Source: Phyllobates terribilis (Eukaryota). From it: a DNA stretch of 64,000 bases. A program made the translations under genes and the position numbers. Positions 3,247-53,575 of this stretch are shown piece after piece. The notes beneath the pieces are model-generated. The model was not told where the DNA came from and did not search any database. It saw only the letters and a program-made list of their open reading frames with translations. Position 1 is the first letter of the stretch. Each line of letters begins with the position of its first letter. The stretch lies in the NCBI RefSeq assembly GCF_046119375.1, contig NW_027362769.1, forward strand, positions 414,718,001-414,782,000. Direction: 5' to 3'.

Positions 3247-6200
3247 TCAGTTTATATAAATTCGGTGGAAATCGTGCGCCCCGAAGGCGGCGTTACACTT
3301 GGGGCACTTCCTCTGTCTGGAGTCGTATCGGGTCTTTACACACTCAAAGCAGAAGACGTGGAAACACTTGGTGAGGACGGCATCCTTCTTACGGGTGTTA
3401 CAGCAGGGGCAGGTGAGACGGGCCTAGGGGGAAGCATGGACATAGTCACCACCAGGTTCTGTGCCCGCATGCAGCCTCAGGCCCTGCGCCTGACCCCTGC
3501 ACCCCGCCCCAGGTGCCAACCCTGCATGAAACCTCGGGCCCTGCACCTGACCCCTGCCCGGGTGCCACCCCTGCATGAAGCCTCTGGCCCTGCGCCTGAC
3601 CCCCGCACCCCGCCCCAGGTGCCAACCCTGCATGAAACCTCGGGCCCTGCACCTGACCCCTGCACCCCGGCCCGGGTGCCACCCCTGCATGAACCCTCGG
3701 GCCCAACGCCTGACCCCACATGAAACCTCGAGCCCTGCGCCTGACCCTAGCCCGGGTGCCACCCCTGCATGAAGCCTCTGGCCCTGTGCCTGACCCCTGC
3801 CCCCCACATGCAGCCTCAGGCCCTGCACCTGACCCTACAAGCATCCAAAGGGCATAACCCCTACAACGCCAGGCGTCACTCACCCGTTCCCCAGAAGCAG
3901 CCAAAGGACCCACACATAACACCTACCCTGGCAAGCACCCTCCTGCCCCACCCCATCACCCATACCCCCATATTTCCAGGGGCAGTTTAGGTGCGGCCTG
4001 TTCGCCCTTACTCTGTACTCTTTGATCTCCTCCTGCAGGATCTGATCAGCGTCCGCATAAACCTCCATCTTCTTTTGTTTCTCCAGTTTTCTACGCAGAC
4101 GTGAGACGTCCTCCTGCAGAAGACGGAGGGTTAATAGGGGGAAGATCGGCGAGAGGGGGACTATGGAAAGGACATACATAGTAACATAGTCTTCCTTCAA
4201 TCTTAAAAACTAAGTCCATCTAGTTCACCCCATAGCCGAACATGTTGATCCAGAGGAAGGCAAAAAAAAGCCATGTGGCAAACACTAAGCTCCACATTGG
4301 GGAAAAAATTCCTTCCCGACTCCATACGACAATCAGACTAGTTCCGTGGATCAACGCCCTATTGAGGAATCTAGTATATATAACCTGTAATATTATACTT
4401 TTCAGGAAAGGCGTCCAGGCCCTTCTTACATGTTAGTAGTGAATCCCTCATTACACCATCATGCGGTAGAGAGCTCCATAGTCTCACTGCTCTTACAGTA
4501 AAGAATCCGCGTCTGTGATTATGATTAAACCTTCTTTCCTCCAGACGTAGAAGATGCCCCCTTGTCCCCGTCTCAGGCCTCAGAGTAAAAAGATCAGTAG
4601 AAAGGTCTTTGTACTGTCCCCTCATATACTTGTACATAGTAATAAGATCCCCCCTAAACTAAATAACCCCAAGTGTAATAACCTGTCTTGGTATTGCAGA
4701 CCCCCCAGTCCTCTAATAACCTGTCTTGGTATTGCAGACCCCCCAGTCCTCTAATAACCTGTCTTGGTATTGCAGACCCCCCAGTCCTCTAATAACCTGT
4801 CTTGGTATTGCAGACCCCCCAGTCCTCTAATAACCTGTCTTGGTATTGCAGACCCCCCCCCGTCCTCTAATAACCTGTCTTGGTATTGCAGACCCCCCCC
4901 CGTCCTCTAATAACCTGTCTTGGTATTGCAGACCCCCCCCCGTCCTCTAATAACCTGTCTTGGTATTGCAGACCCCCCCGTCCTCTAATAACCTGTCTTG
5001 GTATTGCAGACCCCCCCCGTCCTCTAATAACCTGTCTTGGTATTGCAGACCCCCCCCGTCCTCTAATAACCTGTCTTGGTATTGCAGACCCCCCAGTCCT
5101 CTAATAACCTGTCTTGGTATTGCAGACCCCCCAGTCCTCTAATAACCTGTCTTGGTATTGCAGACCCCCCAGTCCTCTAATAACCTGTCTTGGTATTGCA
5201 GACCCCCCAGTCCTCTAATAACCTGTCTTGGTATTGCAGACCCCCCAGTCCTCTAATAACCTGTCTTGGTATTGCAGACCCCCCAGTCCTCTAATAACCT
5301 GTCTTGGTATTGCAGACCCCCCCAGTCCTCTAATAACCTGTCTTGGTATTGCAGACCCCCCCAGTCCTCTAATAACCTGTCTTGGTATTGCAGACCCCCC
5401 CAGTCCTCTAATAACCTGTCTTGGTATTGCAGACCCCCCAGTCCTCTAATAACCTTGGTCGCTCTTCTCTGCACCCGCTCTAGTTCAGCTATGTCTTTCT
5501 TATACACCGGAGACCAGAACTGTACACAGTATTCTAAGTGTGGTCGCACTAGTGACTTGTATAGAGGTAAAATTATCTTCTCCTCATCAGCATCTATGCC
5601 TCTTTTAATGCATCCCATTATTTTATTTGCCTTTGCAGCAGCCGCCTGACACTGGCCACTAAACATGAGCTTGTCGTCCACCAATACACCCAGGTCTTTT
5701 TCAGTTACAGTTTTGCCCAGTGTTTTACAATTAAGCATATAATTATACATTTTATTTCCTCAGCCCAAGTGCATTACCTTACATGTATCCCCATTAAAGC
5801 TCATTTGCCATTTATCAGCCCAAGCTTCTAGTTTACATAGATCCTCCTGTAATATAAAATTGTCCTCCTCTGTATTGATTACCCTACAGAGTTTAGTGTC
5901 ATCTGCAAATACTGAAATATTACTCTGTATGCCCCCTACAAGGTCATTAATAAATATGTTAAAAAGAAGGGGGCCCAATACTGACCCCTGTGGTACCCCA
6001 ATACTGACCCCTGTGGTACCCCACTGTTAACTGAGACCCAGTCTGAGTCTTTTCCATTAATAACCACCCTTTGTTTCCTATCACTGAGCCAATTCTTAAC
6101 CCACATACATATATTTTCCCCTCTCCCCATTGTTCTCATTTTATGCATCAACCTTTTGTGTGGAACCGGATCAAAAGCTTTTGAAAAGTCCATATACACA

Positions 6201-9200
6201 ACATCCACTGCATTTCGTTGGTCCAGTCCAGAACTTGCCTCCTCATAAAAACTGATTAGTTTGACAGGAACGGTCCCTCGTAAACCCATGTTGATATTGG
6301 GTCATGAGGTTCTTCTTCGACACGAGGGTTGCCTGCGCTCTCTAGTGGCGGCTGCGGGGCATCGCCTGCGCTCTCTAGTGGCGGCTGCGGGGCATCGCCT
6401 GCGCTCTCTAGTGGCGGCTGCGGGGCATCGCCTGCGCTCTCTAGTGGCGGCTGCGGGGCATCGCCTGCGCTCTCTAGTGGCGGCTGCGGGGCATCGCCTG
6501 CGCTCTCTAGTGGCGGCTGCGGGGCATCGCCTGCGCTCTCTAGTGGCGGCTGCGGGGCATCGCCTGCGCTCTCTAGTGGCGGCTGCGGGGCATCGCCTGC
6601 GCTCTCTAGTGGCGGCTGCGGGGCATCGCCTGCGCTCTCTAGTGGCGGCTGCGGGGCATCGCCTGCGCTCTCTAGTGGCGGCTGCGGGGCATCGCCTGCG
6701 CTCTCTAGTGGCGGCTGCGGGGCATCGCCTGCGCTCTCTAGTGGCGGCTGCGGGGCATCGCCTGCGCTCTCTAGTGGCGGCTGCGGGGCATCGCCTGCGC
6801 TCTCTAGTGGCGGCTGCGGGGCATCGCCTGCGCTCTCTAGTGGCGGCTGCGGGGCATCGCCTGCGCTCTCTAGTGGCGGCTGCGGGGCATCGCCTGCGCT
6901 CTCTAGTGGCGGCTGCGGGGCATCGCCTGCGCTCTCTAGTGGCGGCTGCGGGGCATCGCCTGCGCTCTCTAGTGGCGGCTGCGGGGCATCGCCTGCGCTC
7001 TCTAGTGGCGGCTGCGGGGCATCGCCTGCGCTCTCTAGTGGCGGCTGCGGGGCATCGCCTGCGCTCTCTAGTGGCGGCTGCGGGGCATTACCTGCGCTCT
7101 CTTCAGGCTGAATGATTCCTTCTCCTTGGCGGAGCGGTTGTCACACACCAGGCTCTGCGTGTCGCGCAGCGTGCTGACTATATGTTCCAGCTGAACCTTC
7201 AGGTCCTCGGCGAGCTGAGCCGCTTCCACTGCCTGGGGTAAGTGTAGGGTGAGTAACAGGCGCGGGCGGAGCCACCACACATCCCAGAGCCACCACACAT
7301 CCCAGAGCCGCCACACATCCCAGAGCCGCCCCACGTCCCAGAACAGTCACACGTCCCAGAGCCGCCCCACGTCCCAGAGCCGCCCCACGTCCCAGAACAG
7401 TCACACGTCCCAGAACAGTCACACGTCCCAGAACAGTCACACGTCCCAGAGCCGCCCCACGTCCCAGAACAGTCACACGTCCCAGAGCCGCCCCGGAGCC
7501 ACCACACATCCCAGAACAGTCACACGTCCCAGAGCCGCCACACGTCCCAGAGCCGCCACACGTCCCAGAGCCGCCCCACGTCCCGGAGCCGCCCCGGAGC
7601 CACCACACATCCCAGAGCCGCCACACGTCCCAGAACAGTCACACGTCCCAGAACCGTCACACGTCCCAGAGCCGTCACACGTCCCAGAGCCGCCCCACGT
7701 CCCGGAGCCGCCCCACGTCCCGGAGCCGTCACACGTCCCAGAGCCGCCCCACGTCCCGGAGCCGCCCCACGTCCCGGAGCCGTCACACGTCCCGGAACCG
7801 TCACACGTCCCAGAACCGTCACACGTCCCAGAACCGTCACACGTCCCAGAGCCGTCACACGTCCCAGAGCCGCCCCACGTCCCAGAGCCGCCCCACGTCC
7901 CAGAGCCGCCCCACGTCCCAGAGCCGCCCCACGTCCCAGAGCCGCCCCACGTCCCAGAGCCGCCCCACGTCCCAGAGCCGCCCCACGTCCCAGAGCCGCC
8001 CCACGTCCCAGAGCCGCCCCACGTCCCAGAGCCGCCACACGTCCCAGAGCCGCCACACGTCCCAGAGCCGCCACACGTCCCAGAACAGTCACACGTCCCA
8101 GAACAGTCACACGTCCCAGAACAGTCACACGTCCCAGAACAGTCACACGTCCCAGAACAGTCACACGTCCCAGAACAGTCACACGTCCCAGAGCCGCCAC
8201 ACGTCCCAGAACAGTCACACGTCCCAGAACAGTCACACGTCCCAGAACAGTCACACGTCCCAGAACAGTCACACGTCCCAGAGCCGCCACACGTCCCAGA
8301 GCCGCCACACGTCCCAGAGCCGCCACACGTCCCAGAGCCGCCACACGTCCCAGAGCCGCCACACGTCCCAGAGCCGCCACACGTCCCAGAGCCGCCACAC
8401 GTCCCAGAGCCGCCACACGTCCCAGAGCCGCCCCACGTCCCAGAGCCGCCCCAAGTCCCAGAGCCGCCACACGTCCCAGAACAGTCACACGTCCCAGAGC
8501 CGCCCCAAGTCCCCGAGCCGCCACACGTCCCAGAGCCGCCCCGGAGCCACCACACATCCCAGAGCCGCCCCACGTCCCAGAGCCGCCCCACGTCCCAGAG
8601 CCGCCCCACGCCCCAGAGCCATCACACATCCCAGAGCCGCCCCGGAGCCATCACACATCCCAGAGCCGCCACACATCCCAGAGCCGCCCCGGAGCCACCA
8701 CACGTCCCAGAGCCGCCCCACGTCCCAGAGCCGCCCCACGTCCCAGAGCCGCCCCACGTCCCAGAGCCGCCCCACGTCCCAGAGCCGCCACACGTCCCAG
8801 AGCCGCCACACGTCCCAGAGCCGCCACACGTCCCAGAGCCGCCACACGTCCCAGAGCCGCCACACGTCCCACGTCCCAGAGCCGCCCCGGAGCCACCACA
8901 CATCCCAGAGCCGCCACACGTCCCAGAACAGTCACACGTCCCAGAGACGCCCCACGTCCCAGAGCCGCCCCGGAGCCACCACACATCCCAGAGCCGCCCC
9001 ACGTCCCAGAGCCGCCACACATCCCAGAACAGTCACACGTCCCAGAGCCGCCACACATCCCAGAACAGTCACACGTCCCACGTCCCAGAGCCGCCCCGGA
9101 GCCACCACACATCCCAGAGCCGCCCCACGTCCCAGAACAGTCACACGTCCCAGAGCCGCCCCGGAGCCACCACACATCCCAGAGCCGCCACACGTCCCAG

Positions 9201-12200
9201 AACAGTCACACGTCCCACGTCCCAGAGCCGCCCCGGAGCCAACACACATCCCAGAGCCGCCCCACGTCCCAGAGCCGCCCCACGTCCCAGAGCCGCCCCA
9301 CGTCCCAGAACAGTCACACGTCCCAGAACAGTCACACGTCCCAGAGCCGCCACACGTCCCAGAACAGTCACACGTCCCAGAACAGTCACACGTCCCAGAA
9401 CAGTCACACGTCCAAGAGCCGCCCCACGTCCAAGAGCCGCCCCGGAGCCACCACACATCCCAGAGCCGCCCCACGTCCCAGAGCCGCCCCACGTCCCAGA
9501 GCCGCCCCACGTCCCAGAGCCGCCCCACGTCCCAGAGCCGCCCCACGTCCCAGAGCCGCCCCACGTCCCAGAACCGCCCCACGTCCCAGAGCCGCCCCAC
9601 GTCCCAGAGCCGCCCCGGAGCCACCACACATCCCAGAGCCGCCCCACGTCCCAGAGCCGCCCCGGAGCCACCACACGTCCCAGAGCCGCCCCGGAGCCAT
9701 CACACGTCCCAGAGCCGCCACACGTCCCAGAGCCGCCACACGTCCCAGAGCCGCCCCACGTCCCAGAGCCGCCACACGTCCCAGAGCCGCCACACGTCCC
9801 AGAGCCGCCACACGTCCCAGAGCCGCCCCACGTCCCAGAGCCGCCCCGGAGCCATCACACATCCCAGAGCCGCCCCGGAGCCACCACACGCCCCGGAGCC
9901 GCCACACGTCCCAGAGCCGCCACACGTCCCAGAGCCGCCACACGTCCCAGAGCCGCCACACGTCCCAGAGCCGCCACACGTCCCAGAGCCGCCACACGTC
10001 CCAGAGCCGCCACACGTCCCAGAGCCGCCACACGTCCCAGAGCCGCCACACGTCCCAGAGCCGCCACACGTCCCAGAGCCGCCACACGTCCCAGAGCCGC
10101 CACACGTCCCAGAGCCGCCACACGTCCCAGAGCCGCCACACGTCCCAGAGCCGCCACACGTCCCAGAGCCGCCACACGTCCCAGAGCCGCCACACGTCCC
10201 AGAGCCGCCACACGTCCCAGAGCCGCCACACGTCCCAGAGCCGCCACACGTCCCAGAGCCGCCACACGTCCCAGAGCCGCCACACGTCCCAGAGCCGCCA
10301 CACGTCCCAGAGCCGCCACACGTCCCAGAGCCGCCACACGTCCCAGAGCCGCCACACGTCCCAGAGCCGCCACACGTCCCAGAGCCGCCACACGTCCCAG
10401 AGCCGCCACACGTCCCAGAGCCATCACACATCCCAGAGCCATCACACATCCCAGAGCCGCCCCACATCCCAGAGCCGCCCCGGAGCCACCACACATCCCA
10501 AAGCCGCCCCGGAGCCACCACACGTCCCAGAGCCGCCACACGTCCCAGAGCCGCCACACGTCCCAGAGCCGCCACACGTCCCAGAGCCGCCACACGTCCC
10601 AGAGCCGCCACACGTCCCAGAGCCGCCCCACGTCCCAGAGCCGCCCCAGAGACATCACACATCCCAGAGCCGCCCCGGAGCCACCACACGCCCCGGAGCC
10701 ATCACACATCCCAGAGCCGCCCCGGAGCCGTCACACATCCCAGAGCCGCCACACGTCCCAGAGCCGCCCCACGTCCCAGAGCCGTCACACGTCCCGGAGC
10801 CGCCCCGGAGCCACCACACATCCCAGAACAGTCACACGTCCCAGAACCGTCACACGTCCCAGAGCCGCCCCACGTCCCAGAGCCGCCCCACGTCCCAGAG
10901 CCGCCCCACGTCCCAGAGCCGCCCCACGTCCCAGAGCCGCCCCACGTCTAGGAGCCGTCACACGTCCCAGAGCCGCCCCACGTCCCGGAGCCGTCACACG
11001 TCCCAGAACAGTCACACGTCCCAGAGCCGCCACACGTCCCAGAGCCGCCCCACGTCCCAGAGCCGCCACACGTCCCAGAGCCGCCACACGTCCCAGAGCC
11101 GCCCCACGTCCCAGAGCCGCCCCAGAGCCACCACACATCCCAGAGCCGCCACACGTCCCAGAGACGCCCCACGTCCCAGAGCCGCCCCGGAGCCACCACA
11201 CATCCCAGAGCCGCCCCACGTCCCAGAGCCGCCACACATCCCAGAACAGTCACACGTCCCACGTCCCAGAGCCGCCACACATCCCAGAACAGTCACACGT
11301 CCCACGTCCCAGAGCCGCCCCGGAGCCACCACACATCCCAGAGCCGCCACACGTCCCAGAACAGTCACACGTCCCACAGCCGCCCCGGAGCCACCACACA
11401 TCCCAGAGCCGCCCCACGTCCCAGAACAGTCACACGTCCCACGTCCCAGAGCCGCCCCGGAGCCACCACACATCCCAGAGCCGCCCCACGTCCCAGAACA
11501 GTCACACGTCCCACGTCCCAGAGCCGCCCCGGAGCCACCACACATCCCAGAGCCGCCCCACGTCCCAGAACAGTCACACGTCCCACGTCCCAGAGCCGCC
11601 CCGGAGCCACCACACATCCCAGAGCCGCCCCACGTCCCAGAGCCGCCCCACGTCCCAGAGCCGCCACACGTCCCAGAACAGTCACACGTCCCAGAGCCGC
11701 CACACGTCCCAGAGCCGCCACACGTCCCAGAACAGTCACACGTCCCAGAACAGTCACACGTCCCAGAGCCGCCACACGTCCCAGAACAGTCACACGTCCC
11801 AGAACAGTCACACGTCCAAGAGTCGCCCCACGTCCAAGAGCCGCCCCGGAGCCACCACACATCCCAGAGCCGCCCCACGTCCCAGAGCCGCCCCACGTCC
11901 CAGAGCCGCCCCACGTCCCAGAGCCGCCCCACGTCCCAGAGCCGCCCCACGTCCCAGAGCCGCCCCACGTCCCAGAGCCGCCCCACGTCCCAGAGCCGCC
12001 CCGGAGCCACCACACATCCCAGAGCCGCCCCACGTCCCAGAGCCGCCCCGGAGCCACCACACGTCCCAGAGCCGCCCCGGAGCCGCCACACGTCCCAGAG
12101 CCGCCACACGTCCCAGAGCCGCCACACGTCCCAGAGCCGCCACACGTCCCAGAGCCGCCACACGTCCCAGAGCCGCCACACGTCCCAGAGCCGCCACACG

Positions 12201-15200
12201 TCCCAGAGCCGCCCCGGAGCCATCACACATCCCAGAGCCGCCCCGGAGCCACCACACGCCCCGGAGCCGCCACACGTCCCAGAGCCGCCACACGTCCCAG
12301 AGCCGCCACACGTCCCAGAGCCGCCCCACGTCCCAGAGCCGCCCCACGTCCCAGAGCCGCCCCACGTCCCAGAGCCGCCCCACGTCCCAGAGCCGCCCCA
12401 CGTCCCAGAGCCGCCCCACGTCCCAGAGCCGCCCCACGTCCCAGAGCCGCCCCGGAGCCACCACACATCCCAGAGCCGCCCCACGTCCCAGAGCCGCCCC
12501 GGAGCCACCACACGTCCCAGAGCCGCCCCGGAGCCGCCACACGTCCCAGAGCCGCCACACGTCCCAGAGCCGCCACACGTCCCAGAGCCGCCACACGTCC
12601 CAGAGCCGCCACACGTCCCAGAGCCGCCCCGGAGCCATCACACATCCCAGAGCCGCCCCGGAGCCACCACACGCCCCGGAGCCGCCACACGTCCCAGAGC
12701 CGCCACACGCCCCGGAGCCGCCACACGTCCCAGAGCCGCCACACGTCCCAGAGCCGCCACACGTCCCAGAGCCGCCACACGTCCCAGAGCCGCCACACGT
12801 CCCAGAGCCGCCACACGTCCCAGAGCCGCCACACGTCCCAGAGCCGCCACACGTCCCAGAGCCGCCACACGTCCCAGAGCCGCCACACGTCCCAGAGCCG
12901 CCACACGTCCCAGAGCCATCACACGTCCCAGAGCCATCACACGTCCCAGAGCCATCACACATCCCAGAGCCGCCCCACATCCCAGAGCCGCCCCGGAGCC
13001 ACCACACATCCCAAAGCCGCCCCGGAGCCACCACACGCCCCAGAGCCGCCACACGTCCCAGAGCCGCCACACGTCCCAGAGCCGCCACACGTCCCAGAGC
13101 CGCCACACGTCCCAGAGCCGCCACACGTCCCAGAGCCGCCACACGTCCCAGAGCCGCCCCAGAGACATCACACATCCCAGAGCCGCCCCGGAGCCACCAC
13201 ACGCCCCGGAGCCATCACACATCCCAGAGCCGCCCCGGAGCCGTCACACGTCCCAGAGCCGCCACACGTCCCAGAGCCGCCCCACGTCCCAGAGCCGCCC
13301 CACGTCCCAGAGCCGCCACACATCCCAGAACCGTCACACGTCCCAGAGCCGCCCCACGTCCCAGAGCCGCCCCACGTCCCAGAGCCGCCCCACGTCCCAG
13401 AGCCGTCACACGTCCCAGAACAGTCACACGTCCCAGAACAGTCACACGTCCCAGAACAGTCACACGTCCCAGAACAGTCACACGTCCCAGAGCCGCCACA
13501 CGTCCCAGAGCCGCCACACGTCCCAGAGCCGCCCCACGTCCCAGAGCCGCCCCACGTCCCAGAGCCGCCCCACGTCCCAGAGCCGCCCCACGTCCCAGAG
13601 CCGCCCCACGTCCCAGAGCCGCCCCACGTCCCAGAGCCGCCCCACGTCCCCGAGCCGCCACACGTCCCAGAGCCGCCACACGTCCCAGAGCCGCCCCGGA
13701 GCCACCACACATCCCAGAGCCGCCCCACGTCCCAGAGCCATCACACATCCCAGAGCCGCCCCGGAGCCATCACACATCCCAGAGCCGCCACACGTCCCAG
13801 AGCCGCCCCACGTCCCAGAGCCGCCCCACGTCCCAGAGCCGCCCCACGTCCCAGAGCCGCCCCACGTCCCAGAGCCGCCACACGTCCCAGAGCCGCCACA
13901 CGTCCCAGAGCCGCCACACGTCCCAGAGCCGCCACACGTCCCAGAGCCGCCCCGGAGCCACCACACATCCCAGAGCCGCCCCACGTCCCAGAGCCGCCAC
14001 ACATCCCAGAACAGTCACACGTCCCAGAGCCGCCACACGTCCCAGAGCCGCCCCAGAGACATCACACATCCCAGAGCCGCCCCGGAGCCACCACACGCCC
14101 CGGAGCCATCACACATCCCAGAGCCGCCCCGGAGCCGTCACACATCCCAGAGCCGCCACACGTCCCAGAGCCGCCACACGTCCCAGAGCCGCCACACGTC
14201 CCAGAGCCGCCACACGTCCCAGAGCCGCCCCGGAGCCACCACACATCCCAGAGCCGTCACACCTCCCAGAGCCTCCCCGGAGCCACCACACGTCCCAGAG
14301 CCACCCTGGAGCTGTCCCGCGCCCCTCCCCGCACCTTCCTCTTCTGGATCTCCAGGGCCTGGGTCCTGAGCGTCAGCTCCTTCTCTATGGCAGCCAGGGA
14401 GGTGTGCAGCACCCGCTCCCGCTCCTCCAGCTTCTGCACCTGTAACAGCTGAGCGTCCACCTGCCGAGGAGAAGCCATCAGACTGGCCCTGCATCCCCCA
14501 GACACCCCAGGAGGTCCCGCCGGGGTACCTGTGTCTTCAGGCCCTGCACCTGCTCCGCCAGCTCCTCCTTCTCCTCCCGCAGCAGCTTGTGGATCTGGTT
14601 GGATTTGATCCGCTCAGACATGAGCTTGAAGTTGGCATCGTCCTTTTCTCGCAGCTGCTGCATCAGGCGGATGTTCTGCTCCTGCATGTCCTCGAAGGCC
14701 TGCCCCGTCACATCCATCTCCGAGAGCAAAGCCTCCTCCTCCTGGATAGCGGAGGGATGTGGTCAGAGCGGCATCCGCCGGCACCCTCACCCCGCCGGCC
14801 GGGCACCACCCTCACCTGCTTGGTTGCGCTGAGTTTCCGCTGCAGATGTTCGATCTGCTCCTCGGCGAGCTTAATCTTGCGCAGCGCTTCCTCGTCCGCC
14901 AGCTTCTTCCGCTCGCGACGATCCTTTTCTTCCAGCACTTGAACCCGTAATCGCAGCTCCTCCATCTGCGAGAAACACAGGGGTGTGATGGCAGGCCGTG
15001 GCCCGCGGCCCCCCGGGAGCAGAGTGCGCACACACCTCAGCTTTGGTCTTCCTCTCGGCTGCCATCAGCTGCACCTTGTCTCTCTGCTCCTTGGGGGCGG
15101 ATTTGTACATATCGAGAAGCAGCTTCATCTCCTTCTGACTCTCCTGGGCTTTTCTACGAGAAGGACAAATAACAGATCAAGAGTCAGCAGCGGACGGAGG

Positions 15201-18200: not shown

Positions 18201-21200
18201 GCACGGCCTCAGGGCGCAGTGTTGGGGAGCGCAGGCAGTGTCGGGGGGTGGGCGCAACGTTGGGGAGCACAGTGTTGGGGGGGTTGGTGCAGCGTTGGGG
18301 CACAGGCACGGCCTTAGGGCGCAGCGTTGGGGAGCGCAGTGTCGGGGGGTGGGCGCAGCGTTGGGGAGCGCAGGCAGTGTCGGGGGTGGGCGCAGCGTTG
18401 GGGCACAGGCACGGCCTCAGGGCGCAGCGTTGGGGAGCGCAGGCAGTGTCGGGGGGGTGGGCGCAGCGTTGGGGAGCGCAGGCAGTGTCGGGGGTGGGCG
18501 CAGCGTTGGGGCACAGGCACGGCCTCAGGGCGCAGCGTTGGGGAGCGCAGGCAGTGTCGGGGGTGGGCGCAGCGTTGGGGCACAGGCACGGCCTCAGGGC
18601 GCAGTGTTGGGGAGCGCAGGCAGTGTCGGGGGGTGGGCGCAGCGTTGGGGAGCACAGTGTTGGGGGGGGTTGGTGCAGCGTTGGGGCACAGGCACGGCCT
18701 TAGGGCGCAGCGTTGGGGAGCGCAGTGTCGGGGGGTGGGCGCAGCGTTGGGGAGCGCAGGCAGTGTCGGGGGGTGGGCGCAGCGTTGGGGCACAGGCACG
18801 GCCTCAGGGCGCAGCGTCTTCTGGTACCTGCTTGTTCATTGGCAGCCAGATTCTGCTCGAACTCGATCCTCAGCATCTCGTACTCCTTGCGCACCTGAGC
18901 GAGCGTGTCCTCCAGCTGGATGACCTCGGTGCGCAGCTTCTTCTGTACAGACAGCTCCTCGCTCTGTGGAAGCAGACACCAGAGTGAGCGGTGGTCTCAC
19001 ACAGGCCGCCACGGTAATAATGATGCCCGGTAGAGCGCTCACCTCCATGCGCTCGATCTGCCGCAGGTGGCTATTCTTGGTGCTCAGGAGCAGCGCTCGC
19101 GCTTCGTCCAGCTGAGTCTTCACCTGCAGGGACTCGTTATACAGAAGTGAGAACTGGGACTGCAGACAGCGGAAGTCCTGCGTCCCCCTGACCGCCTCCT
19201 CCGGGAGGGTCCGCAGATCAAGCTGTAAGAATACAAACTTGGGGAAGACTGCAAGCCCCAAGAGACCCTCTACCCAACGCCCAGAGACCCCCGTTACACT
19301 GGTCACGGACCTTCAGCTTCTCCTTCAGCCGCACGGCCGCTTGCAGCTCGTTCTGCAGCTTCTCCAGCTCACACATGCGGCCGTTCGCCAATTCTTGGTT
19401 TTGTTCCAGCTCAGCATTCAGCATCTCAAACTGAGAAAGGAGACAATGCAAAAGACAGCAGCACAGAGGACTTCAGACATCACCAGACAGGACCCCATTA
19501 CCTTCTGCACCGTCAGCGTCGTCTGTCCTCCCTGGAAACTGCCAGAACTTCCAGAGATGTGGTGTCCAGAAGTCAGCTACGGAAAGACAATGAGGGAATC
19601 TGAGGAGAGCGGGCCGACGGCGGAGAGCGAAGGAGAGCGGGCCGACGGCGGAGAGCGAAGGAGAGCGGGCCGACGGCGGAGAGCGAAGGAGAGCGGGCCG
19701 ACGGCGGAGAGCGAAGGAGAGCGGGCCGACGGCGGAGAGCGAAGGAGAGCGGGCCGACGGCGGAGAGCGAAGGAGAGCGGGCCGACGGCGGAGAGCGAAG
19801 GAGAGCGGGCCGACGGCGGAGAGCGAAGGAGAGCGGGCCGACGGCGGAGAGCGAAGGAGAGCGAGGGCCAGCGGGGGAGAGCGAAGGAGAGCGAGGGCCA
19901 GCGGGGGAGGGAGGAGAGCGAAGGAGAGCGAGGGCCAGCGGCGGAGGGAGGAGAGCGAGGGCCAGCGGGGGACGGAGGAGAGCGAAGGAGAGCGGGCCGA
20001 CGGCGGAGGGAGGAGAGCGAAGGAGAGCGAGGGCCAGCGGGGGAGGGAGGAGAGCGGGCCGACGGCGGAGGGAGGAGAGCGAGGGCCAGCGGGGGACGGA
20101 GGAGAGCGAAGGAGAGCGAGGGCCGACGGCGGAGGGAGGAGAGCGAAGGAGAGCGAGGGCCAGCGGCGGAGGGAGGAGAGCGAGGGCCAGCGGGGGACGG
20201 AGGAGAGCGAAGGAGAGCGGGCCGACGGCGGAGGGAGGAGAGCGGGCCGACGGCGGAGGGAGGAGAGCGAAGGAGAGCGAGGGCCAGCGGGGGACGGAGG
20301 AGAGCGAAGGAGAGCGAGGGCCGACGGCGGAGGGAGGAGAGCGAAGGAGAGCGAGGGCCAGCGGCGGACGGAGGAGAGCGAAGGAGAGCGGGCCGACGGC
20401 GGAGAGCGAGGGCCAGCGGCGGACGGAGGAGAGCGAAGGAGAGCGGGCCGACGGCGGACGGAGGAGAGCGAGGGCCAGCGGCGGACGGAGGAGAGCGAAG
20501 GAGAGCGGGCCGACGGCGGAGGGAGGAGAGCGAAGGCCAGCGGGGGAGGGAGGAGAGCGAAGGCCAGCGGGGGAGGGAGGAGAGCGAAGGCCAGCGGGGG
20601 AGGGAGGAGAGCGAAGGCCAGCGGGGGAGGGAGGAGAGCGAAGGCCAGCGGGGGAGGGAGGAGAGCGAAGGCCAGCGGGGGAGGGAGGAGAGCGAAGGCC
20701 AGCGGGGGAGGGAGGAGAGCGAAGGCCAGCGGGGGAGGGAGGAGAGCGAAGGCCAGCGGGGGAGGGAGGAGAGCGAAGGCCAGCGGGGGAGGGAGGAGAG
20801 CGAAGGCCAGCGGGGGAGGGAGGAGAGCGAAGGCCAGCGGGGGAGGGAGGAGAGCGGGACGACGGCAGAGGAGCAGAGTGGGGGACGGAGGAGAGCTGGG
20901 TACGGAGGCGGCCCCGGCAGAGGAGCCACATGGTGACCGGCGGGTACGCACCTGATCCAGGGCCTCCGCCAGGTGGCGGTTCAGCTTCTGCTCGTGTTTG
21001 CGCAGTTTCTCGATGTCCCACTGCAGATCCTCGATGCTTCGCTCCATTTCTGACACTTTGGTTTCAGATGAAGTGACGCGGTCCTGGAGCTCATGGTGCT
21101 GGAGGGTGAGAACAGAGGGCGGGTCAGGAGGGACAACAGGATGGGTCAGAGAGGGGGATAAGACCCCGCCATGTCATGTACCGGGATCCTCCAACACTAT

Positions 21201-24200
21201 ATATAGAGGGGGATAAGACCCCGCCATGTCATGTACCGGGGTCCCCAAGTACTATATATAGAGGGGGATAAGACCCCGCCATGTCATGTACCGGGGTCCC
21301 CAAGTACTATATATAGAGGGGGATAAGACCCCGCCATGTCATGTACCGGGATCCTCCAACACTATATATAGAGGGGGATAAGACCCCGCCGTGTCATGTA
21401 CCGGGATCCTCCAACACTATATATAGAGGGAGATAAGACCCCGCCATGTCATGTACCGGGATCCTCCAACACTATATATAGAGGGGGATAAGACCCCGCC
21501 ATGTCATGTACCGGGATCCTCCAACACTATATATAGAGGGGGATAAGACCCCGCCATGTCATGTACCGGGGTCCCCAAGTACTATATATAGAGGGGGATA
21601 AGACCCCGCCATGTCATGTACCGGGGTCCCCAAGTACTATATATAGAGGGGGATAAGACCCCGCCATGTCATGTACCGGGATCCTCCAACACTATATATA
21701 GAGGGGGATAAGACCCCGCCATGTCATGTACCGGGATCCTCCAACACTATATATAGAGGGAGATAAGACCCCGCCATGTCATGTACCGGGATCCTCCAAC
21801 ACTATATATAGAGGGGGATAAGACCCCGCCATGTCATGTACCGGGATCCTCCAACACTATATATAGAGGGGGATAAGACCCCGCCGTGTCATGTACCGGG
21901 ATCCTCCAACACTATATATAGAGGGGGATAAGACCCCGCCATGTCATGTACCGGGATCCTCCAACACTATATATAGAGGGAGATAAGACCCCGCCGTGTC
22001 ATGTATCGGGATCCTCCAACACTATATATAGAGGGGGATAAGACCCCGCCGTGTCATGTACCGGGATCCTCCAACACTATATATAGAGGGGGATAAGACC
22101 CCGCCGTGTCATGTACCGGGGTCCCCAAGAACTATATATAGAGGGAGATAAGACCCCGCCGTGTCATGTACCGGGATCCTCCAACACTATATATAGAGGG
22201 AGATAAGACCCCGCCGTGTCATGTACCGGGGTCCCCAAGAACTATATATAGAGGGGGATAAGACCCCGCAGTGTCATGTATCGGGGTCCCCAAGAACTAT
22301 ATATAGAGGGGGATAAGACCCCGCAGTGTCATGTATCGGGGTCCCCAAGAACTATATATAGAGGGGGATAAGACCCCGCCGTGTCATGTACCGGGATCCT
22401 CCAACACTATATATAGAGGGAGATAAGACCCCGCCGTGTCATGTACTGGGATCCTCCAACACTATATATAGAGGGGGATAAGACCCCGCCGTGTCATGTA
22501 TCGGGGTCCCCAAGAACTATATATAGAGGGGGATAAGACCCCGCAGTGTCATGTATCGGGGTCCCCAAGAACTATATATAGAGGGGGATAAGACCCCGCC
22601 GTGTCATGTATCAGGATCCTCCAGTACTATATATAGAGGGGGATAAGACCCCGCCGTGTCATGTACCGGGGTCCCCAAGAACTATATATAGAGGGGGATA
22701 AGACCCCACCGTGTCATGTATCAGGATCCTCCAGTACTATATATAGAGGGGGATAAGACCCCGCCGTGTCATGTATCAGGATCCTCCAGTACTATATATA
22801 GAGGGGGATAAGACCCCGCCGTGTCATGTACCGGGATCCTCCAACACTATATATAGAGGGAGATAAGACCCCGCCGTGTCATGTACTGGGATCCTCCAAC
22901 ACTATATATAGAGGGGGATAAGACCCCGCCGTGTCATGTATCGGGGTCCCCAAGAACTATATATAGAGGGGGATAAGACCCTGCAGTGTCATGTATCGGG
23001 GTCCCCAAGAACTATATATAGAGGGGGATAAGACCCCGCCGTGTCATGTATCAGGATCCTCCAGTACTATATATAGAGGGGGATAAGACCCCGCCGTGTC
23101 ATGTACCGGGGTCCCCAAGAACTATATATAGAGGGGGATAAGACCCCACCGTGTCATGTATCAGGATCCTCCAGTACTATATATAGAGGGGGATAAGACC
23201 CCGCCGTGTCATGTACCGGGATCCTCCAACACTATATATAGAGGGGGATAAGACCCCGCCATGTCATGTAATGGAATCCTCCAACACTATATATAGAGGG
23301 GGATAAGACCCCGCCATGTCATGTAATGGAATCCTCCAACACTATATATAGAGGGAGATAAGACCCCGCCATGTCATGTAATGGAATCCTCCAACACTAT
23401 ATATAGAGGGGGATAAGACCCCGCCATGTCATGTACCAGGATCCTCCAACACTATATATAGAGGGGGATAAGACCCCGCCGTGTCATGTACCGGGATCCT
23501 CCAACACTATATATAGAGGGGGATAAGACCCCGCCGTGTCATGTAACGGAATCCTCCAACACTATATATAGAGGGGGATAAGACCCCGCCATGTCATGTA
23601 CCGGGATCCTCCAACACTATATATAGAGGGGGATAAGACCCCGCCATGTCATGTACCGGGATCCTCCAACACTATATATAGAGGGGGATAAGACCCCGCC
23701 ATGTCATGTACCGGGATCCTCCAACACTATATATAGAGGGGGATAAGACCCCGCCGTGTCATGTATCAGGATCCTCCAACACTATATATAGAGGGAGATA
23801 AGACCCCGCCGTGTCATGTACCGGGATCCTCCAACACTATATATAGAGGGGGATAAGACCCCGCCGTGTCATGTACCGGGATCCTCCAACACTATATATA
23901 GAGGGAGATAAGACCCCGCCGTGTCATGTATCAGGATCCTCCAGTACTATAGAGGGGGATAAGACCCCGCCGTGTCATGTACCGGGATCCTCCAACACTA
24001 TATATAGAGGGAGATAAGACCCCGCCGTGTCATGTACCGGGATCCTCCAACACTATATATAGAGGGGGATAAGACCCCGCCGTGTCATGTACCGGAATCC
24101 TCCAACACTATATATAGAGGGGGATAAGACCCCAGCGTGTCATGTATCGGGGTCCCCAAGAACTATATATAGAGGGGGATAAGACCCCGCAGTGTCATCT

Positions 24201-27075
24201 ACCGGGGTCTTCCAGCACTATATAAAGAGGGGGATAACACCCCGCCATGCCATGTACCGGGGTCCCCAAGTACTATATATAAAGACCCCACTCTGGCGAT
24301 GTCGGGGGTCCGCACCTGTAGTGAGATGCGGTGGTGCTTCTCCTGGAGGACAGTCGCCAGGTCCTGCAGTTTGTGGTCCTCAGTGAAGACCTCCTTGTTC
24401 TGCGATCGATGCGTCTCCTCCACCTGATCAGCGTCTGGGGGGTACAGAATACGGGGTGACATCCCATCATGCTCTCTGCTCTGTGCCAGGGTTAAGCGGG
24501 GTCACTTACCTGCGCCGCGTTCGCACAGCTCCTGCATCCGGCCGTGCAGCTTGCTGGAGGTCTCCAGGACGCAGGACACCGCGCGCTTACTGAACTCCAT
24601 GCGGTCCTGCAGCTGCAGCTCCATCTCCTCTGCGGTGCTGAACGCCAGGGTGGCCAGGAACGTCAGAGAGGATTCTGGGAGAACGCCGGGGGAGGCCTGC
24701 GCTGCAGGGGCCGCTGCGGGGGCCGAGGAGTCTGCAGACACCAGAGAGCAGAGGTGAGAGCCATGGATGCTGTGCCAGGACCTCCGATACAACGCCCAGG
24801 ACAGGACACCCAATGGCCGCCGCCCGGCTGACAGTCCTAAGCATGCAACACCCTCAGAGGGAGGACCACAACCCCCAGCAGAGCCGCATCAAAGACCAAG
24901 ATAAAAAGTCGCCGCCCACAGTGCCCGGGGGGACCGCCTGCCGCCGGAGTCCGGGTGGGGGGGGGGGGGGGGGGTGGGTGACGGCATGACTGGATGCTTC
25001 TGACGCCGCAGCATTTTGTTCTCTGACATGTTTTGCACATCGGCTGTGGGGAGCGGCGAGTTCTGCTCCTGAGGATGTGACCGGAGCAACCAGACATGAG
25101 CAGTCGCATCCCGGTACCTTTGCTATCGGACACCTCGGTGAGCGGCTCCTCTGCAGCCTCCGGCTCTGTGGGATTCTCTGTGTTTTCGGGGGGCGCGTCC
25201 ACAGCAGCGCCGGCATCAGAGTCGTAGCGCTTCAACAGAAGCTGCACATTCTCATCCAGCTGGAAAGAAGGGCGAGAATCAGCAGAGCAAGAACATAGCG
25301 GAGGCCGTCCACACATAGCCTCCAGCAGTCCTGAACCCCTGACTGTCCGCCAGCCCACCGCAGCCCGTTACTGTCCCGCCAAACCCCGCCATGTCCCCCA
25401 ACCCCTCAATGTCCCTCTTCTGACCCACTCACTGTCCGCCAGCCCACCGCAGCCCGTTACTGTCCTGCCAGAGCCCACCATGTCCCCCTCCCCACCGCAG
25501 CCCGTTACTGTCCTGCCAGAGCCCACCATGTCCCCCGACCCCTCACTGTCCCCCTCCCCACCGCAGCCCGTTACTGTCCTGCCAGAGCCCACCATGTCCC
25601 CCGACCCCTCACTGTCCCCCTCCTGACCCACCCACTGTCCCCTGCCCCCCCTCCACTGTACCCCCATGTTCTAGCAGCCCAGCCCCCCTCATTTACATCC
25701 TCTCCCGTGGTCTTCCCTCACCTGGCTCCAGTAGCGGTTGACAATAAGCAGCGTGGCGTCGTCCGTGGCTTGTCGCTTCTCCAGCTTCTCTATCTTCTCG
25801 CGGAGCTCGTCCTCCACTCCCTGACGCTGCTCCAGACGCTCCGCCAGCTTCTTGTTCTTGAACTGTAAGACCTTCATGTCCATCTCCTCCTGAGAACAGG
25901 AGTCAGCAGTGAGGAGGAGAAGAAGAACAAGAAGAAGAACAAGAAGAAGAACAACAANNNNNNNNNNNNNNNNNNNNNNNNNNNNNNNNNNNNNNNNNNN
26001 NNNNNNNNNNNNNNNNNNNNNNNNNNNNNNNNNNNNNNNNNNNNNNNNNNNNNNNNNNNNNNNNNNNNNNNNNNNNNNNNNNNNNNNNNNNNNNNNNNNN
26101 NGAACAACAAGAAGAAGAACAACAAGAAGAAGAACAACAAGAAGAAGAACAACAAGAAGAAGAACAACAAGAAGAAGAACAACAAGAAGAACAACAACAA
26201 GANNNNNNNNNNNNNNNNNNNNNNNNNNNNNNNNNNNNNNNNNNNNNNNNNNNNNNNNNNNNNNNNNNNNNNNNNNNNNNNNNNNNNNNNNNNNNNNNNN
26301 NNNNNNNNNNNNNNNNNNNNNNNNNNNNNNNNNNNNNNNNNNNNNNNNNNNNNNNNNNNNNNNNNNNNNNNNNNNNNNNNNNNNNNNNNNNNNNNNNNNN
26401 NNNNNNNNNNNNNNNNNNNNNNNNNNNNNAGAAGAAGAAGAAGGACGAGGAGAAGAGGGGCCAAAAGGGAGAAAACGAGAAGAAGAAGAAGAAGGACGAG
26501 GACAAGAGGGGCCAAAGGGAGAAAACGAGAAGAAGAAGGACGAGGACGAAGAGGGGCCAAAGAGAGAAAACGAGAAGAAGAAGGACGAGGACGAAGAGGG
26601 GCCAAAGGGAGAAAACGAGAAGAAGAAGGACGAGGACGAAGAGGGGCCAAAGGGAGAAAACGAGAAGAAGAAGGACGAGGACGAAGAGGGGCCAAAGGGA
26701 GAAAACGAGAAGAAGAAGGACGAGGACGAAGAGGGGCCAAAGGGAGAAAACGAGAAGAAGAAGGACGAGGACGAAGAGGGGCCAAAGGGAGAAAACGAGA
26801 AGAAGAAGGACGAGGACGAAGAGGGGCCGAAGGGAGAAAGAAGAAGAAGAGGGGCCGAAGGGAGAAAGAAGAAGAAGAGGGGCCGAAGGGAGAAAGAAGA
26901 AGAAGAGGGGCCGAAGGGGGACAGAGGCGTGGGAGGCACTGACCGTAGAGGAGATGCCGCCCAGGCGGATGGGCTCGATCAGCGTGGTCGGCGTCTTCTC
27001 CTCATGGTTGGGCTTCTTCTCTGGGGGACCTGACACTCCGTCCCCCGACGCTCTCTTGTTACCGGGGGCAGACAT
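3247..27075 (-). CDS. rnf40: E3 ubiquitin-protein ligase BRE1B (RING finger protein 40), 19 coding exons, 973 aa
   Basis: Exons (minus, 5'->3'): 27075-26944, 25889-25722, 25259-25118, 24731-24510, 24434-24316, 21098-20952, 19576-19502, 19430-19311, 19222-19043, 18963-18828, 15790-15669, 15583-15252, 15153-15036, 14965-14816, 14741-14529, 14460-14335, 7232-7092, 4113-4012, 3423-3247. All introns GT-AG, phases consistent, total 2922 nt. N-term [67 protein letters not shown] matches RNF40 rather than RNF20. C-terminal RING: [39 protein letters not shown]. Confidence 0.97.
3471..3835. repeat. ~50-57-bp degenerate minisatellite in the last rnf40 intron
   Basis: Repeated CCTGACCCCTGCACCCCGCCCCAGGTGCCAACCCTGCATGAAACCTCGGGCCCTGCA and shortened variants. 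Confidence 0.85.
4176..6312 (-). mobile_element. 5'-truncated, degenerate CR1-clade LINE (3' part of ORF2 RT, 3' UTR and tail)
   Basis: Minus-strand fragments [69 protein letters not shown]; ORF2 stop near 4371; short-repeat tail ACATAGTAACATAGT (+) at 4176-4190; several frameshifts and stops. Confidence 0.93.
4676..5455. repeat. 38-bp tandem repeat (~20 copies) amplified from inside the CR1 RT
   Basis: Unit ACCTGTCTTGGTATTGCAGACCCCCCAGTCCTCTAATA encodes CR1 [11 protein letters not shown] on the minus strand; CR1 sequence resumes on both sides. Confidence 0.95.
6331..7102. repeat. 33-bp near-perfect tandem repeat (~23 copies) containing a copy of the rnf40 exon/intron junction
   Basis: Unit GCCTGCGCTCTCTAGTGGCGGCTGCGGGGCATC; the terminal unit overlaps the exon end and the GT donor at 7091. 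Confidence 0.97.
7266..14305. repeat. 18-bp minisatellite (~7 kb) filling an rnf40 intron
   Basis: Core CACGTCCCAGAGCCGC(C/A) with variants AACAGTCA and CCCCGGAGCCACCACACAT; 6-aa periodicity (HVPEPP). Confidence 0.97.
15880..18815. repeat. Composite G-rich minisatellite (~35-40-bp modules, ~105-110-bp superunit)
   Basis: Modules GGGGCACAGGCACGGCCTCAGGGCGCAGTGTT, GGGGAGCGCAGGCAGTGTCGGGGGGTGGGCGCAGCGTT and GGTGAGCACAGTGTCG(G)nTTGGTGCAGCGTT in shuffled order. Confidence 0.93.
19606..20860. repeat. 27/28-bp purine-rich minisatellite
   Basis: GGAGAGCGAAGGAGAGCGGGCCGACGGC grading into GGCCAGCGGGGGAGGGAGGAGAGCGAA. Confidence 0.93.
21149..24281. repeat. 55-bp tandem repeat (~57 copies)
   Basis: Unit GAGGGGGATAAGACCCCGCCRTGTCATGTACCGGGATCCTCCAACACTATATATA; the pattern shifts 5 nt per 60-nt line, giving period 55. 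Confidence 0.97.
25340..25625. repeat. Short degenerate tandem repeat in an rnf40 intron
   Basis: Repeated CCACCGCAGCCCGTTACTGTCCTGCCAGAGCCCACCATGTCCCC (4-5 copies). Confidence 0.8.
25912..26915. repeat. GAA/AAC low-complexity tract plus 45-bp repeat, with two N runs (25958-26101, 26203-26429)
   Basis: (AAG/AAC)n then GAAAACGAGAAGAAGAAGGACGAGGACGAAGAGGGGCCAAAGGGA x~8. Confidence 0.9.
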
Positions 27076-46868: not shown

Positions 46869-47161
46869 TACATATGAATATTGGAAAAAAATGAACTGCA
46901 ATACTGCTATAGAAAAATTACAGTAAAAGAAGGTACTTAGCGCATAAATTAGCCAAGATATGTGTGAGCCCAACAACCATCGTCAAGGCCTACCTCATTG
47001 TTGGGTCCCTATTCTGATAAGTCACCTCTCCTGGACTAAAAAACCTACAATTTATAGGGCAGGAAGGATCCAGCTAATTAAAACCACCTACGGATGATGG
47101 GAGTAGGAGTGCTCTGGTCAGGAGGAGTTTGCTACAAACAGACAAGCTGACCGGCACATCC

Positions 47162-53324: not shown

Positions 53325-53575
53325 AGAAACGCAAGATTCTACATCTGGGCAAGAAAAACGAAATACAACTAAGCAACAGCACATGTGAAAAAGACTTGTG
53401 TATACTAATAGATCATAGACTGAACAGGAGTCAACAGTGTGATGCAGCAGCAAAAAAGGCAAATACAATTCTGGGATGTAGTAACAGAAGCATACAGTCT
53501 AGATCACGTGAAGTAATTATCCCCTCTACTCCTCCTTGGTCAGACCTCATCTGGATACTGTGTCCAGTTCTGGGA
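53325..53575 (+). mobile_element. CR1 LINE ORF2 fragment that seeds the 99-bp satellite
   Basis: KILHLGKKN...CEKDLCILIDHRLNRSQQCDAAAKKANTILGCSNRSIQSRSREVIIP(LYSSLVRPHL) is typical CR1 RT C-terminal sequence. Confidence 0.88.

What the first reader, a model, noticed from the sequence alone, without database searches (positions are those of the whole stretch)
6331..7102. Tandem array made from an rnf40 splice donor, with GT replaced by GC in every extra copy
On the sense strand the exon ends AAGAGAGCGCAG|GTAATGCCCCGCAGCCGCCACT. It is followed by about 23 apparently identical units AGAGAGCGCAG-GCGATGCCCCGCAGCCGCCACT. The last 12 nt around the junction (AGAGAGCGCAGG) are reiterated, but only the first copy keeps GT; the rest read CAG|GCGATG. 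The 33-nt period is in frame but each unit has an in-frame TAG (CAC TAG), so use of a downstream GC donor would truncate the protein before the RING domain. Inference: either selection kept only donor-dead copies, or the array is a bank of weak GC donors/U1 decoys that could tune rnf40 through NMD.
Basis: partly seen in the sequence, partly recalled or inferred. Interest (0 to 1): 0.7.

Follow-up and report, generated by a model that had tools for sequence, protein, structure and literature searches.

The report
Splice-junction minisatellite in frog rnf40
An intron of a frog's rnf40 gene starts with a 33-base tandem repeat copied from the exon end and its splice signal, with that signal disabled (GT to GC) in every extra copy. 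This kind of repeat is already known from human genes and here looks like a harmless by-product of very repeat-prone DNA.

Summary
On the minus strand, an rnf40/BRE1B exon (window 7232-7092) ends AGAGAGCGCAG|GTAATG. From 7102 there is one GT unit, then 22 identical 33-nt units reading CAG|GCGATG, then a 13-nt partial unit ending at 6331. This abuts a 5'-truncated CR1-type LINE. Reading on from the exon meets TAG at 7070-7068.

The setting is ordinary for this locus. Tandem arrays make up 71% of the window and 82% of rnf40's intron bases. Eight of 18 introns are inflated by local minisatellites that start 10-95 nt after the donor. This array is the extreme case, starting 11 nt inside the exon.

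RNA contigs from this species and a close relative join 7092 to 4113, so the authentic GT donor is used. No contig shows use of a GC copy. The GC copies pair poorly with U1 (-4.5 against -8.1 kcal/mol).

Arrays whose first unit spans an exon-intron boundary are a described class (F7, CBS, IFI6, LMNB2, PDGF; PMC1557585). The scan has noted others of this kind elsewhere in this same genome. The unusual detail is that every extra donor is disabled. Selection is plausible but weakly supported (p 0.03-0.11).

Verdict: new member of a known kind, probably inert. The decoy/NMD idea is unsupported.

The parts
7092..7232 (-). rnf40 (BRE1B) exon, number 17 of 19 coding exons in my reading; encodes [12 protein letters not shown]...SFSLKRAQ
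   Evidence: Translation. Aligns with human BRE1B residues 863-909, E 6e-14. RNA contigs of two species cover 7091-7234 and continue into the neighbouring exons.
7086..7094 (-). Authentic 5' splice site CAG|GTAATG (positions -3 to +6)
   Evidence: RNA contigs X11 and X17 end here and continue with window 4083-4112. Seven contiguous U1 base pairs, duplex -8.1 kcal/mol.
7070..7102 (-). Unit 0 of the array: the last 11 exon bases plus the first 22 intron bases. It is the only unit with GT.
   Evidence: Register table.
6344..7069 (-). 22 identical 33-nt units, AGAGAGCGCAG-GCGATGCCCCGCAGCCGCCACT, each a junction copy with GT>GC and +3 A>G
   Evidence: Collapsed 63-nt cycle contigs appear in runs X3 and X11.
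6331..6343 (-). Partial last unit AGAGAGCGCAGGC, directly abutting the LINE fragment
   Evidence: The same junction appears in an independent DNA run: the X3 loose end equals window 6301-6330.
7068..7070 (-). First in-frame stop (TAG) met when reading on from the exon; it recurs every 33 nt
   Evidence: The read-through ORF ends ...[11 protein letters not shown] at 7071.
4205..6330 (-). 5'-truncated, decayed CR1-type LINE in the sense orientation, filling most of the rest of intron 17. The 3' limit is approximate.
   Evidence: RVT_1 hits at 5939-6301 (E 4e-8) and 5763-6026 (E 1e-12). Frame changes between ORF pieces. No second copy in the window to fix the 3' end.
4676..5455 (-). 38-nt x 20 array that arose inside the CR1 coding region
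   Evidence: its translation repeats ...[15 protein letters not shown]....
4012..4113 (-). Next rnf40 exon ([34 protein letters not shown]), with acceptor cag| at 4114-4116
   Evidence: Sequence. The loose end of the RNA contig matches 4083-4112 exactly.
7269..14302 (-). 18-nt x about 400 minisatellite filling 99% of the upstream intron 16. It leaves 32 nt after that intron's donor and 36 nt before the acceptor of exon 17.

Best explanation
This is a young minisatellite made on the spot. A 33-nt tandem duplication spanned the boundary between exon 17 and intron 17 of rnf40. One of the resulting units was then amplified by replication slippage or unequal exchange, in a chromosome region where almost every longer intron has been inflated in the same way.

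The unit that was amplified carried GC instead of GT (and G instead of A at +3). The 22 extra junction copies are therefore not usable splice donors. The spliceosome uses the authentic, most upstream GT donor at 7091 and removes the whole array, together with the CR1 fragment, as ordinary intron.

Shown here: the anatomy, the use of the canonical junction, and the repeat-saturated setting.

Inferred:
- The way the array expanded.
- That the array has no function.
- That haplotypes with GT-bearing extra copies were either never formed (founder effect, possibly helped by AT>GC-biased conversion) or were removed by selection. I put these two at roughly even odds.
For: (1) Anatomy: one GT unit, 22 identical GC units and a 13-nt partial unit, contiguous with the exon.

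(2) The exon end encodes KRAQ, and every orthologous ORF fragment found reads KRAQ followed by V (GTN) and then diverges. So the exon end and GT are ancestral and the array copies are derived.

(3) Setting: 71% of the window and 82% of rnf40's intron bases are tandem arrays. Ten introns are 68-98 nt with no array. Eight introns hold arrays with different units, and 5 of them are more than 90% array. These arrays start 18, 71, 34, 95, 10, 32, -11 and 294 nt from the donor, so this one is the tail of a continuum. With ancestral introns of about 80 nt, a random 33-nt duplication would span the donor in roughly a quarter of cases (my estimate).

(4) Splicing: a 1038-nt RNA contig of the same species (X11) and a 3092-nt contig of a relative (X17, 3 differences in 144 nt) both join 14335|7232 and 7092|4113. 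No contig links the exon to unit 0 in the RNA run. The collapsed array contig has word depth 11, against 1430 for the exon contig.

(5) The GC copy has 4 contiguous U1 base pairs, at -4.5 kcal/mol. The real site has 7, at -8.1.

(6) No stable RNA structure (z +1.7) and no Rfam family.

Against: - The RNA evidence comes from assembled contigs, which drop rare variants and cannot measure levels. Transcripts spliced from GC copies would also be degraded by NMD, so low-level use is not excluded.
- Both differences between unit 0 and the other units lie in the donor hexamer (p 0.03-0.11). This hints that the GC state was not purely accidental.
- No DNA from a close relative was available, so neither the age of the array nor the order of array and CR1 insertion is known.
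- The 13-nt partial unit next to the CR1 5' end is not explained by a simple duplication.
- The copy number in the assembly was not verified.
Confidence: 0.8

Rival explanations
1. Selection-filtered expansion. Junction duplications arise often here, but copies that keep GT compete with the real donor, bring in the in-frame TAG and lower RNF40 dosage. So only a unit whose donor was already dead could expand. The array itself remains functionless. This is a sub-case of the best explanation and differs only in why the copies read GC.
For: Both differences from unit 0 lie in the donor hexamer, one of them at the essential +2; p=0.028 under uniform placement. Any downstream donor would give a premature stop ahead of the RING exon. 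[quoted passage not shown]
Against: If only AT>GC changes are considered, p rises to 0.11. F7, LMNB2 and PDGF keep identical GT pseudo-sites that stay silent, because the most upstream site wins. Earlier scan notes report arrays in this same genome that keep GT in 15-62 copies (not tested here).
Confidence: 0.4
2. The GC copies are weak alternative donors. Their occasional use sends a share of rnf40 transcripts to nonsense-mediated decay, so array length tunes expression.
For: GC-AG introns exist. Every copy keeps CAG|G and A at +4. The premature TAG lies upstream of two exon junctions, so such transcripts would be NMD targets.
Against: Only the canonical junction is present in RNA contigs of two species. 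No contig contains the exon joined to GTAATG..., which every such isoform must contain. The copies lack +5G and +6T, which functional GC donors normally need (established knowledge of GC-AG introns), and pair with U1 at only -4.5 kcal/mol. The array is young and homogeneous and was not seen in any orthologue fragment.
Confidence: 0.05
3. The array acts as a sink or landing pad for U1 snRNP or for C-rich or purine-rich RNA-binding proteins, and changes the kinetics of exon 17 definition or of intron 17 removal.
For: There are 23 copies of an exon-end motif and of C-rich tracts right after the donor. Intronic VNTRs can affect splicing in ABCA7 (PMC5954066) and TERT (PMC3948165), listed (abstracts only).
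Against: U1 complementarity is poor. There is no RNA structure. No conservation evidence exists. Seven other introns of the same gene carry unrelated arrays, which argues for a neutral regional process.
Confidence: 0.05
4. The copy number, or the perfect identity of the 22 units, is an assembly artefact.
For: All 22 units are identical. In DNA run X3 the collapsed cycle contig has word depth 73, against 23 for the unique exit contig. That is about 3 copy equivalents rather than 22. The window contains N runs.
Against: The entry (X1) and exit (X3) junctions of the array are exact in other runs, and X3 comes from another sample and study. A 772-nt array is short for long-read assembly. The depth ratio fits copy-number polymorphism or GC bias equally well, and the tool warns against reading depth from contigs.
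Confidence: 0.08

Closest known systems
Human F7 intron 7 minisatellite (37-bp VNTR, 5-9 units; Borensztajn et al. 2006, PMC1557585)
   Same: The first unit spans the exon-intron boundary (4 exon + 33 intron bases there, 11 + 22 here), so the junction is reiterated in the intron. Only the most upstream donor is used.
   Different: In F7 the pseudo-sites are identical GT sites that are functional when unmasked. Here all 22 extra copies read GC and differ at +3. F7 is a proven VNTR; polymorphism here is only hinted.
Human CBS intron 13 31-bp VNTR (15-20 monomer repeats) and IFI6 (6-16) intron 2 minisatellite (25 pseudo-sites), as summarised in PMC1557585
   Same: A minisatellite at the exon/intron border that reiterates the donor. 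[quoted passage not shown]
   Different: In both human genes the two nearest pseudo-sites are used alongside the authentic donor. Here no use of extra copies was seen and every copy is disabled. I could not read the primary CBS and IFI6 papers.
Human LMNB2 100-bp and PDGF 81-bp intronic repeats that reiterate the exon/intron junction (cited in PMC1557585)
   Same: [quoted passage not shown] This matches the picture in rnf40, where arrays fill whole introns.
   Different: Longer units. Whether their copies are intact GT sites was not checked here.
Other junction-derived arrays noted by this scan in the same genome (MRPS18C, EMC1, three neighbouring genes; notes s1-225786, s1-224872, s1-224811)
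   Same: Same genome, and the same construction from an exon end plus its donor, in repeat-packed regions with short introns.
   Different: Those notes describe copies that keep the GT donor. The rnf40 array is the one with GT>GC throughout. The notes were not re-tested here.

Membership tests
Exon-intron-boundary minisatellite (F7 IVS7 / CBS IVS13 type) | Head-to-tail array of units of roughly 10-100 nt inside an intron | tested here: met
   33-nt period, 23.4 copies, 99% matches.
Exon-intron-boundary minisatellite (F7 IVS7 / CBS IVS13 type) | The first unit contains the end of the exon and the start of the intron, so the junction sequence is reiterated downstream | tested here: met
   Unit 0 is 11 exon nt plus 22 intron nt. 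The exon identity and boundary are fixed by the BRE1B alignment and by spliced RNA contigs.
Exon-intron-boundary minisatellite (F7 IVS7 / CBS IVS13 type) | The authentic, most upstream donor is the one used in mature mRNA | tested here: met
   RNA contigs X11 and X17 join 7092|4113.
Exon-intron-boundary minisatellite (F7 IVS7 / CBS IVS13 type) | Reiterated donors are intact GT pseudo-sites (true of F7; not required by the broader class) | tested here: not met
   All 22 copies and the partial unit read GC at +1/+2.
Exon-intron-boundary minisatellite (F7 IVS7 / CBS IVS13 type) | Copy number varies among individuals (VNTR) | tested here: inconclusive
   In X3, the word depth of the cycle contig is 73 against 23 for the exit contig, suggesting fewer copies in another individual. 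Contig depth is unreliable.
Alternative 5' splice sites coupled to NMD | Junction reads from the alternative donors to the shared acceptor | tested here: inconclusive
   None in contigs of two RNA runs, but contigs drop rare forms and NMD removes such RNAs.
Alternative 5' splice sites coupled to NMD | Use of the alternative site introduces a premature stop more than about 50 nt upstream of a later exon junction | tested here: met
   TAG at 7070-7068, with two junctions downstream: the array copy to exon 18, and exon 18 to exon 19 after a further 102 nt.
Functional GC-AG donor | Strong match to the consensus outside +2 (notably +5G), compensating for the C (established knowledge of GC-AG introns) | tested here: not met
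   CAG|GCGATG has T at +5 and G at +6. Four contiguous U1 base pairs, -4.5 kcal/mol.
U1 decoy / pseudo-5' splice site silencer | Substantial complementarity to the 5' end of U1 snRNA | tested here: not met
   Duplex -4.5 kcal/mol, against -8.1 for the real site and -14.0 for the consensus.
U1 decoy / pseudo-5' splice site silencer | Measurable effect on the choice or efficiency of the neighbouring real site | not testable with these tools
   Needs minigenes or allele-specific expression.

The most novel reading that the evidence does not exclude
The array is a length-variable regulator of RNF40 dosage. The 22 GC junction copies would be used at a low rate as donors (GC-AG splicing into an in-frame TAG, then NMD), or would slow commitment at the real donor. 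Alleles with more units would then make less of this histone H2B ubiquitin ligase subunit. My data do not exclude this, because they are contigs and not reads.
Probability: 0.05. Interest if true: 0.6.

Novelty: new member of a known kind. Interest (0 to 1): 0.25.

Why it matters
Taken alone, it matters little. It adds a frog example to a small, described class of minisatellites that reiterate a splice junction.

Two things give it modest value:
- It is a natural 'all pseudo-donors dead' counterpart to F7, where all pseudo-donors are intact. Together with GT-keeping arrays reported in the same genome, it could test whether selection filters which junction copies may expand.
- The locus shows how a compact gene with introns of about 80 nt can be inflated about seven-fold by in-situ minisatellites that stop just short of the splice signals. 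That gives a direct read-out of the minimal intron sequence that selection protects.

Tried and rejected
- Read laying on the whole intron was not attempted, because the tool turns away long repeats. I laid only 7004-7268 (exon plus three units). Explicit joints could therefore not be tabulated and were inferred from loose ends, which match 4083-4112 and 14337-14366 exactly.
- All runs offered were contigs, not raw reads, so rare junctions and levels could not be measured.
- The orthologous intron in close relatives could not be reached. The word search with exon plus read-through (54 aa) gave 39 ORF fragments at 57-71% identity, none close. All seven that I read (P0001-P0004, P0007, P0010, P0014) show KRAQ|V and then diverge. 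P0007 equals the human exon translation, so I took it as possibly human and did not fetch, compare or search it further. No contigs were fetched for any hit.
- I did not use the large protein search, because the claim does not rest on absence of relatives.
- RNA structure hiding the copies is rejected (z +1.7).
- A shared recombination 'core' among arrays is rejected. The 33-nt unit and the upstream 18-nt unit share an inverted 9-mer, but several unrelated array pairs also share 9-mers.
- A common origin with the 28-nt array at 42632-45271, which shares (AG)3GCGCRGG, is rejected. The similarity stops after 12 nt of low-complexity sequence.
- The CR1 3' end could not be defined from other copies, as none is in the window.
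- MaxEntScan was not available. I used U1 duplex energy instead.
- The IFI6 primary paper is not held. The P. terribilis genome paper has no hit for tandem repeats, satellites or introns.
Exons were read and counted by reference only. N runs were left untouched.

Full report
**What is there**

On the minus strand, window 7232-7092 is an exon that translates to [47 protein letters not shown]. It aligns over its full length with residues 863-909 of human BRE1B/RNF40 (PDB chain 8gui_L, E 6e-14) and more weakly with BRE1A. The exon ends AAGAGAGCGCAG and is followed by GTAATGCCCCGCAGCCGCCACT.

TRF reports a 33-nt period with 23.4 copies and 99% matches at 6331-7102. Laid out in register:
- Unit 0 (7102-7070) holds the last 11 exon bases and the first 22 intron bases, with GT.
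- Units 1-22 (7069-6344) are identical to one another. They differ from unit 0 at two sites only, intron +2 (T>C) and +3 (A>G), so they read CAG|GCGATG.
- A 13-nt partial unit, AGAGAGCGCAGGC (6343-6331), ends the array.

Otherwise the description is accurate. Reading on from the exon gives VMPRSRH and then TAG at 7070-7068. The next exon begins at 4113 after ...tcttctgcag. The RING finger lies in the last exon, 3423-3253 (Pfam zf-C3HC4).

**What surrounds it**

Directly after the partial unit comes a 5'-truncated, frame-shifted CR1-type LINE in the same orientation. It has RVT_1 hits at 5939-6301 and 5763-6026 and contains a 38-nt x 20 array of its own at 4676-5455. Intron 17 (2978 nt) is therefore the junction array, the CR1 fragment and about 100 nt before the acceptor.

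I read the whole gene by eye from the non-repeat segments. This gave 19 coding exons totalling 2919 nt (972 codons plus stop), with all 18 introns GT-AG.
- Ten introns are 68-98 nt and free of arrays.
- Eight introns contain tandem arrays, each with a different unit.
- Introns 5, 6, 10 and 16 are 91-99% array.
- Arrays start 18, 71, 34, 95, 10, 32, -11 and 294 nt from the donor. Excluding intron 17, they end 26-212 nt before the acceptor.
- Overall, 71% of the 64-kb window and 82% of rnf40's intron bases are arrays with period 10 or more.

The finding is thus the extreme member of a local continuum. It is the one array whose unit happened to include the donor and 11 exon bases. With ancestral introns of about 80 nt, a random 33-nt duplication would span the donor in roughly a quarter of cases (my estimate), so one such case among eight arrays is not surprising.

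**Is the real donor used?**

The look-up of sequencing runs returned only runs kept as contigs. The reads tool turns away long repeats, so I laid only 7004-7268, which is the exon plus three units.
- X11, an RNA run of the same species, has a 1038-nt contig covering 7091-7234. Its loose ends are exactly window 4083-4112 and 14337-14366. These are the canonical junctions 7092|4113 and 14335|7232.
- X17, a run of a close relative (3 differences in 144 nt), has a 3092-nt contig with the same two junctions.
- In X11 no contig joins the exon to GTAATG..., which any transcript spliced from a downstream copy must contain.
- The collapsed 63-nt array contig has word depth 11, against 1430 for the exon contig.

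The tool warns that contig depth is a poor measure and that contigs drop rare variants. This shows that the authentic site dominates, not that the GC copies are never used.

DNA runs confirm the entry (X1: exon through unit 0 to 7059) and the exit (X3, from another sample and study: array to CR1, exact). In X3 the cycle contig has depth 73 against 23 for the exit contig. This hints at about 3 rather than 22 copies in that animal, which could be copy-number polymorphism or GC bias. It is a weak hint only.

**Could the GC copies work as donors or decoys?**

The real site CAG|GTAATG forms 7 contiguous pairs with the U1 5' end (-8.1 kcal/mol), which is mid-range for the 18 donors of this gene. The copy CAG|GCGATG forms 4 (-4.5 kcal/mol) and lacks +5G and +6T. 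From established knowledge of GC-AG introns, functional GC donors need a strong consensus elsewhere, and this one does not have it. The exon end plus the first units fold no better than shuffled sequence (z +1.7), and no Rfam family matches.

**Why are all copies GC?**

The 22 copies are identical, so the amplified founder unit already carried both changes. Both lie in the donor hexamer. This has p=0.028 if any two of the 33 sites could differ. Both changes are AT>GC in a 73% GC unit, as GC-biased conversion would favour. Restricted to the 11 A/T sites, p is 0.11.

The literature shows that intact GT copies can be tolerated. In F7 intron 7, 4-8 identical pseudo-sites stay silent because the most upstream site is chosen. 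LMNB2 and PDGF behave likewise. CBS and IFI6 use the two nearest pseudo-sites (PMC1557585). Earlier notes of this scan describe arrays in this same genome (named there as the golden poison frog) that keep GT in 15-62 copies. I did not re-test them. Selection against GT-bearing copies is therefore plausible, and I give it about 0.4. It is neither necessary nor demonstrated.

**Origin**

Every orthologous ORF fragment that I read shows ...LKRAQ followed by V (GTN) and then diverges. So the exon end and the GT are ancestral, and the array copies are derived from them. None of these fragments is from a close relative, so the age of the array is unknown. One fragment (P0007) equals the human exon translation, and I left it alone.

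The order of CR1 insertion and array growth is unresolved. The 13-nt partial unit against the CR1 5' end would fit insertion into an existing array with loss of the distal part. The homogeneity of the array does not date it.

**Comparison and verdict**

This belongs to a described class: minisatellites whose first monomer spans an exon-intron boundary (PMC1557585). The scan has already met the class elsewhere in this genome. The distinctive detail is that the donor is disabled in every extra copy. [quoted passage not shown]

The most likely mechanism is none. The array is intronic ballast, removed together with the intron after the authentic upstream GT is used (confidence 0.8). The proposed origin is supported, the selection alternative stays open, and the decoy/NMD bank is unsupported. 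Novelty: new member of a known kind. Interest: 0.25.

Noticed in passing
window 3250-27075 (minus strand): rnf40 is a compact gene: 10 of its 18 introns are 68-98 nt. In-situ minisatellites inflate it about seven-fold and fill introns 5, 6, 10 and 16 to 91-99%. They leave only 10-95 nt after the donor and 26-118 nt before the acceptor, which reads out the minimal intron sequence that is protected.
   Followed up: partly
window 7269-14302 and 6331-7102: The arrays on either side of exon 17 carry a complementary 9-mer (GUGGCGGCU upstream, AGCCGCCAC downstream, in the RNA). In principle this could loop out or circularise the 141-nt exon. However, several unrelated array pairs in the window also share 9-mers, so it is near chance level.
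   Followed up: partly
window 42632-45271: A 28-nt x about 90 array upstream of rnf40 carries (AG)nGCGC(A/G)GG on the minus strand, matching the exon-end 12-mer with 0-1 mismatch. The similarity stops there. It is probably a low-complexity coincidence.
   Followed up: partly
window 53469-56962 and 63175-64000; also 21150-24281: A 100-nt satellite is built from the C-terminal coding part of a CR1 LINE (translation ...IIPLYSSLVRPHL...). The 55-nt array filling rnf40 intron 5 shares a 13-mer with it in inverted orientation, so some arrays here may derive from transposable elements.
   Followed up: no
window 47161-49067, 57210-57696, 62500-62815 (plus strand): The units of these arrays contain consensus donor-like motifs (GCAGGTGAG, CCAGGTAAGCG). 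No adjoining exon was seen in the ORF lists, so whether they too derive from a splice junction is open.
   Followed up: no
window 46162-46449 (plus strand): An ORF fragment resembling a Tc1/mariner-type transposase (…DNDPKHTSK…), judged by eye only.
   Followed up: no
window 7024-7088, run X3: In an independent DNA sample, the collapsed array contig has about 3 times the word depth of the unique array-CR1 junction contig. The assembly has 22 copies, so this may mean copy-number polymorphism or GC coverage bias.
   Followed up: no
window 25958-26101 and 26203-26429: Two N runs lie inside rnf40 intron 1, between arrays of AAG-rich units. Two further N runs (30337-30505, 35242-35375) lie upstream of rnf40's start codon, within or at the edge of the large upstream array.
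   Followed up: no
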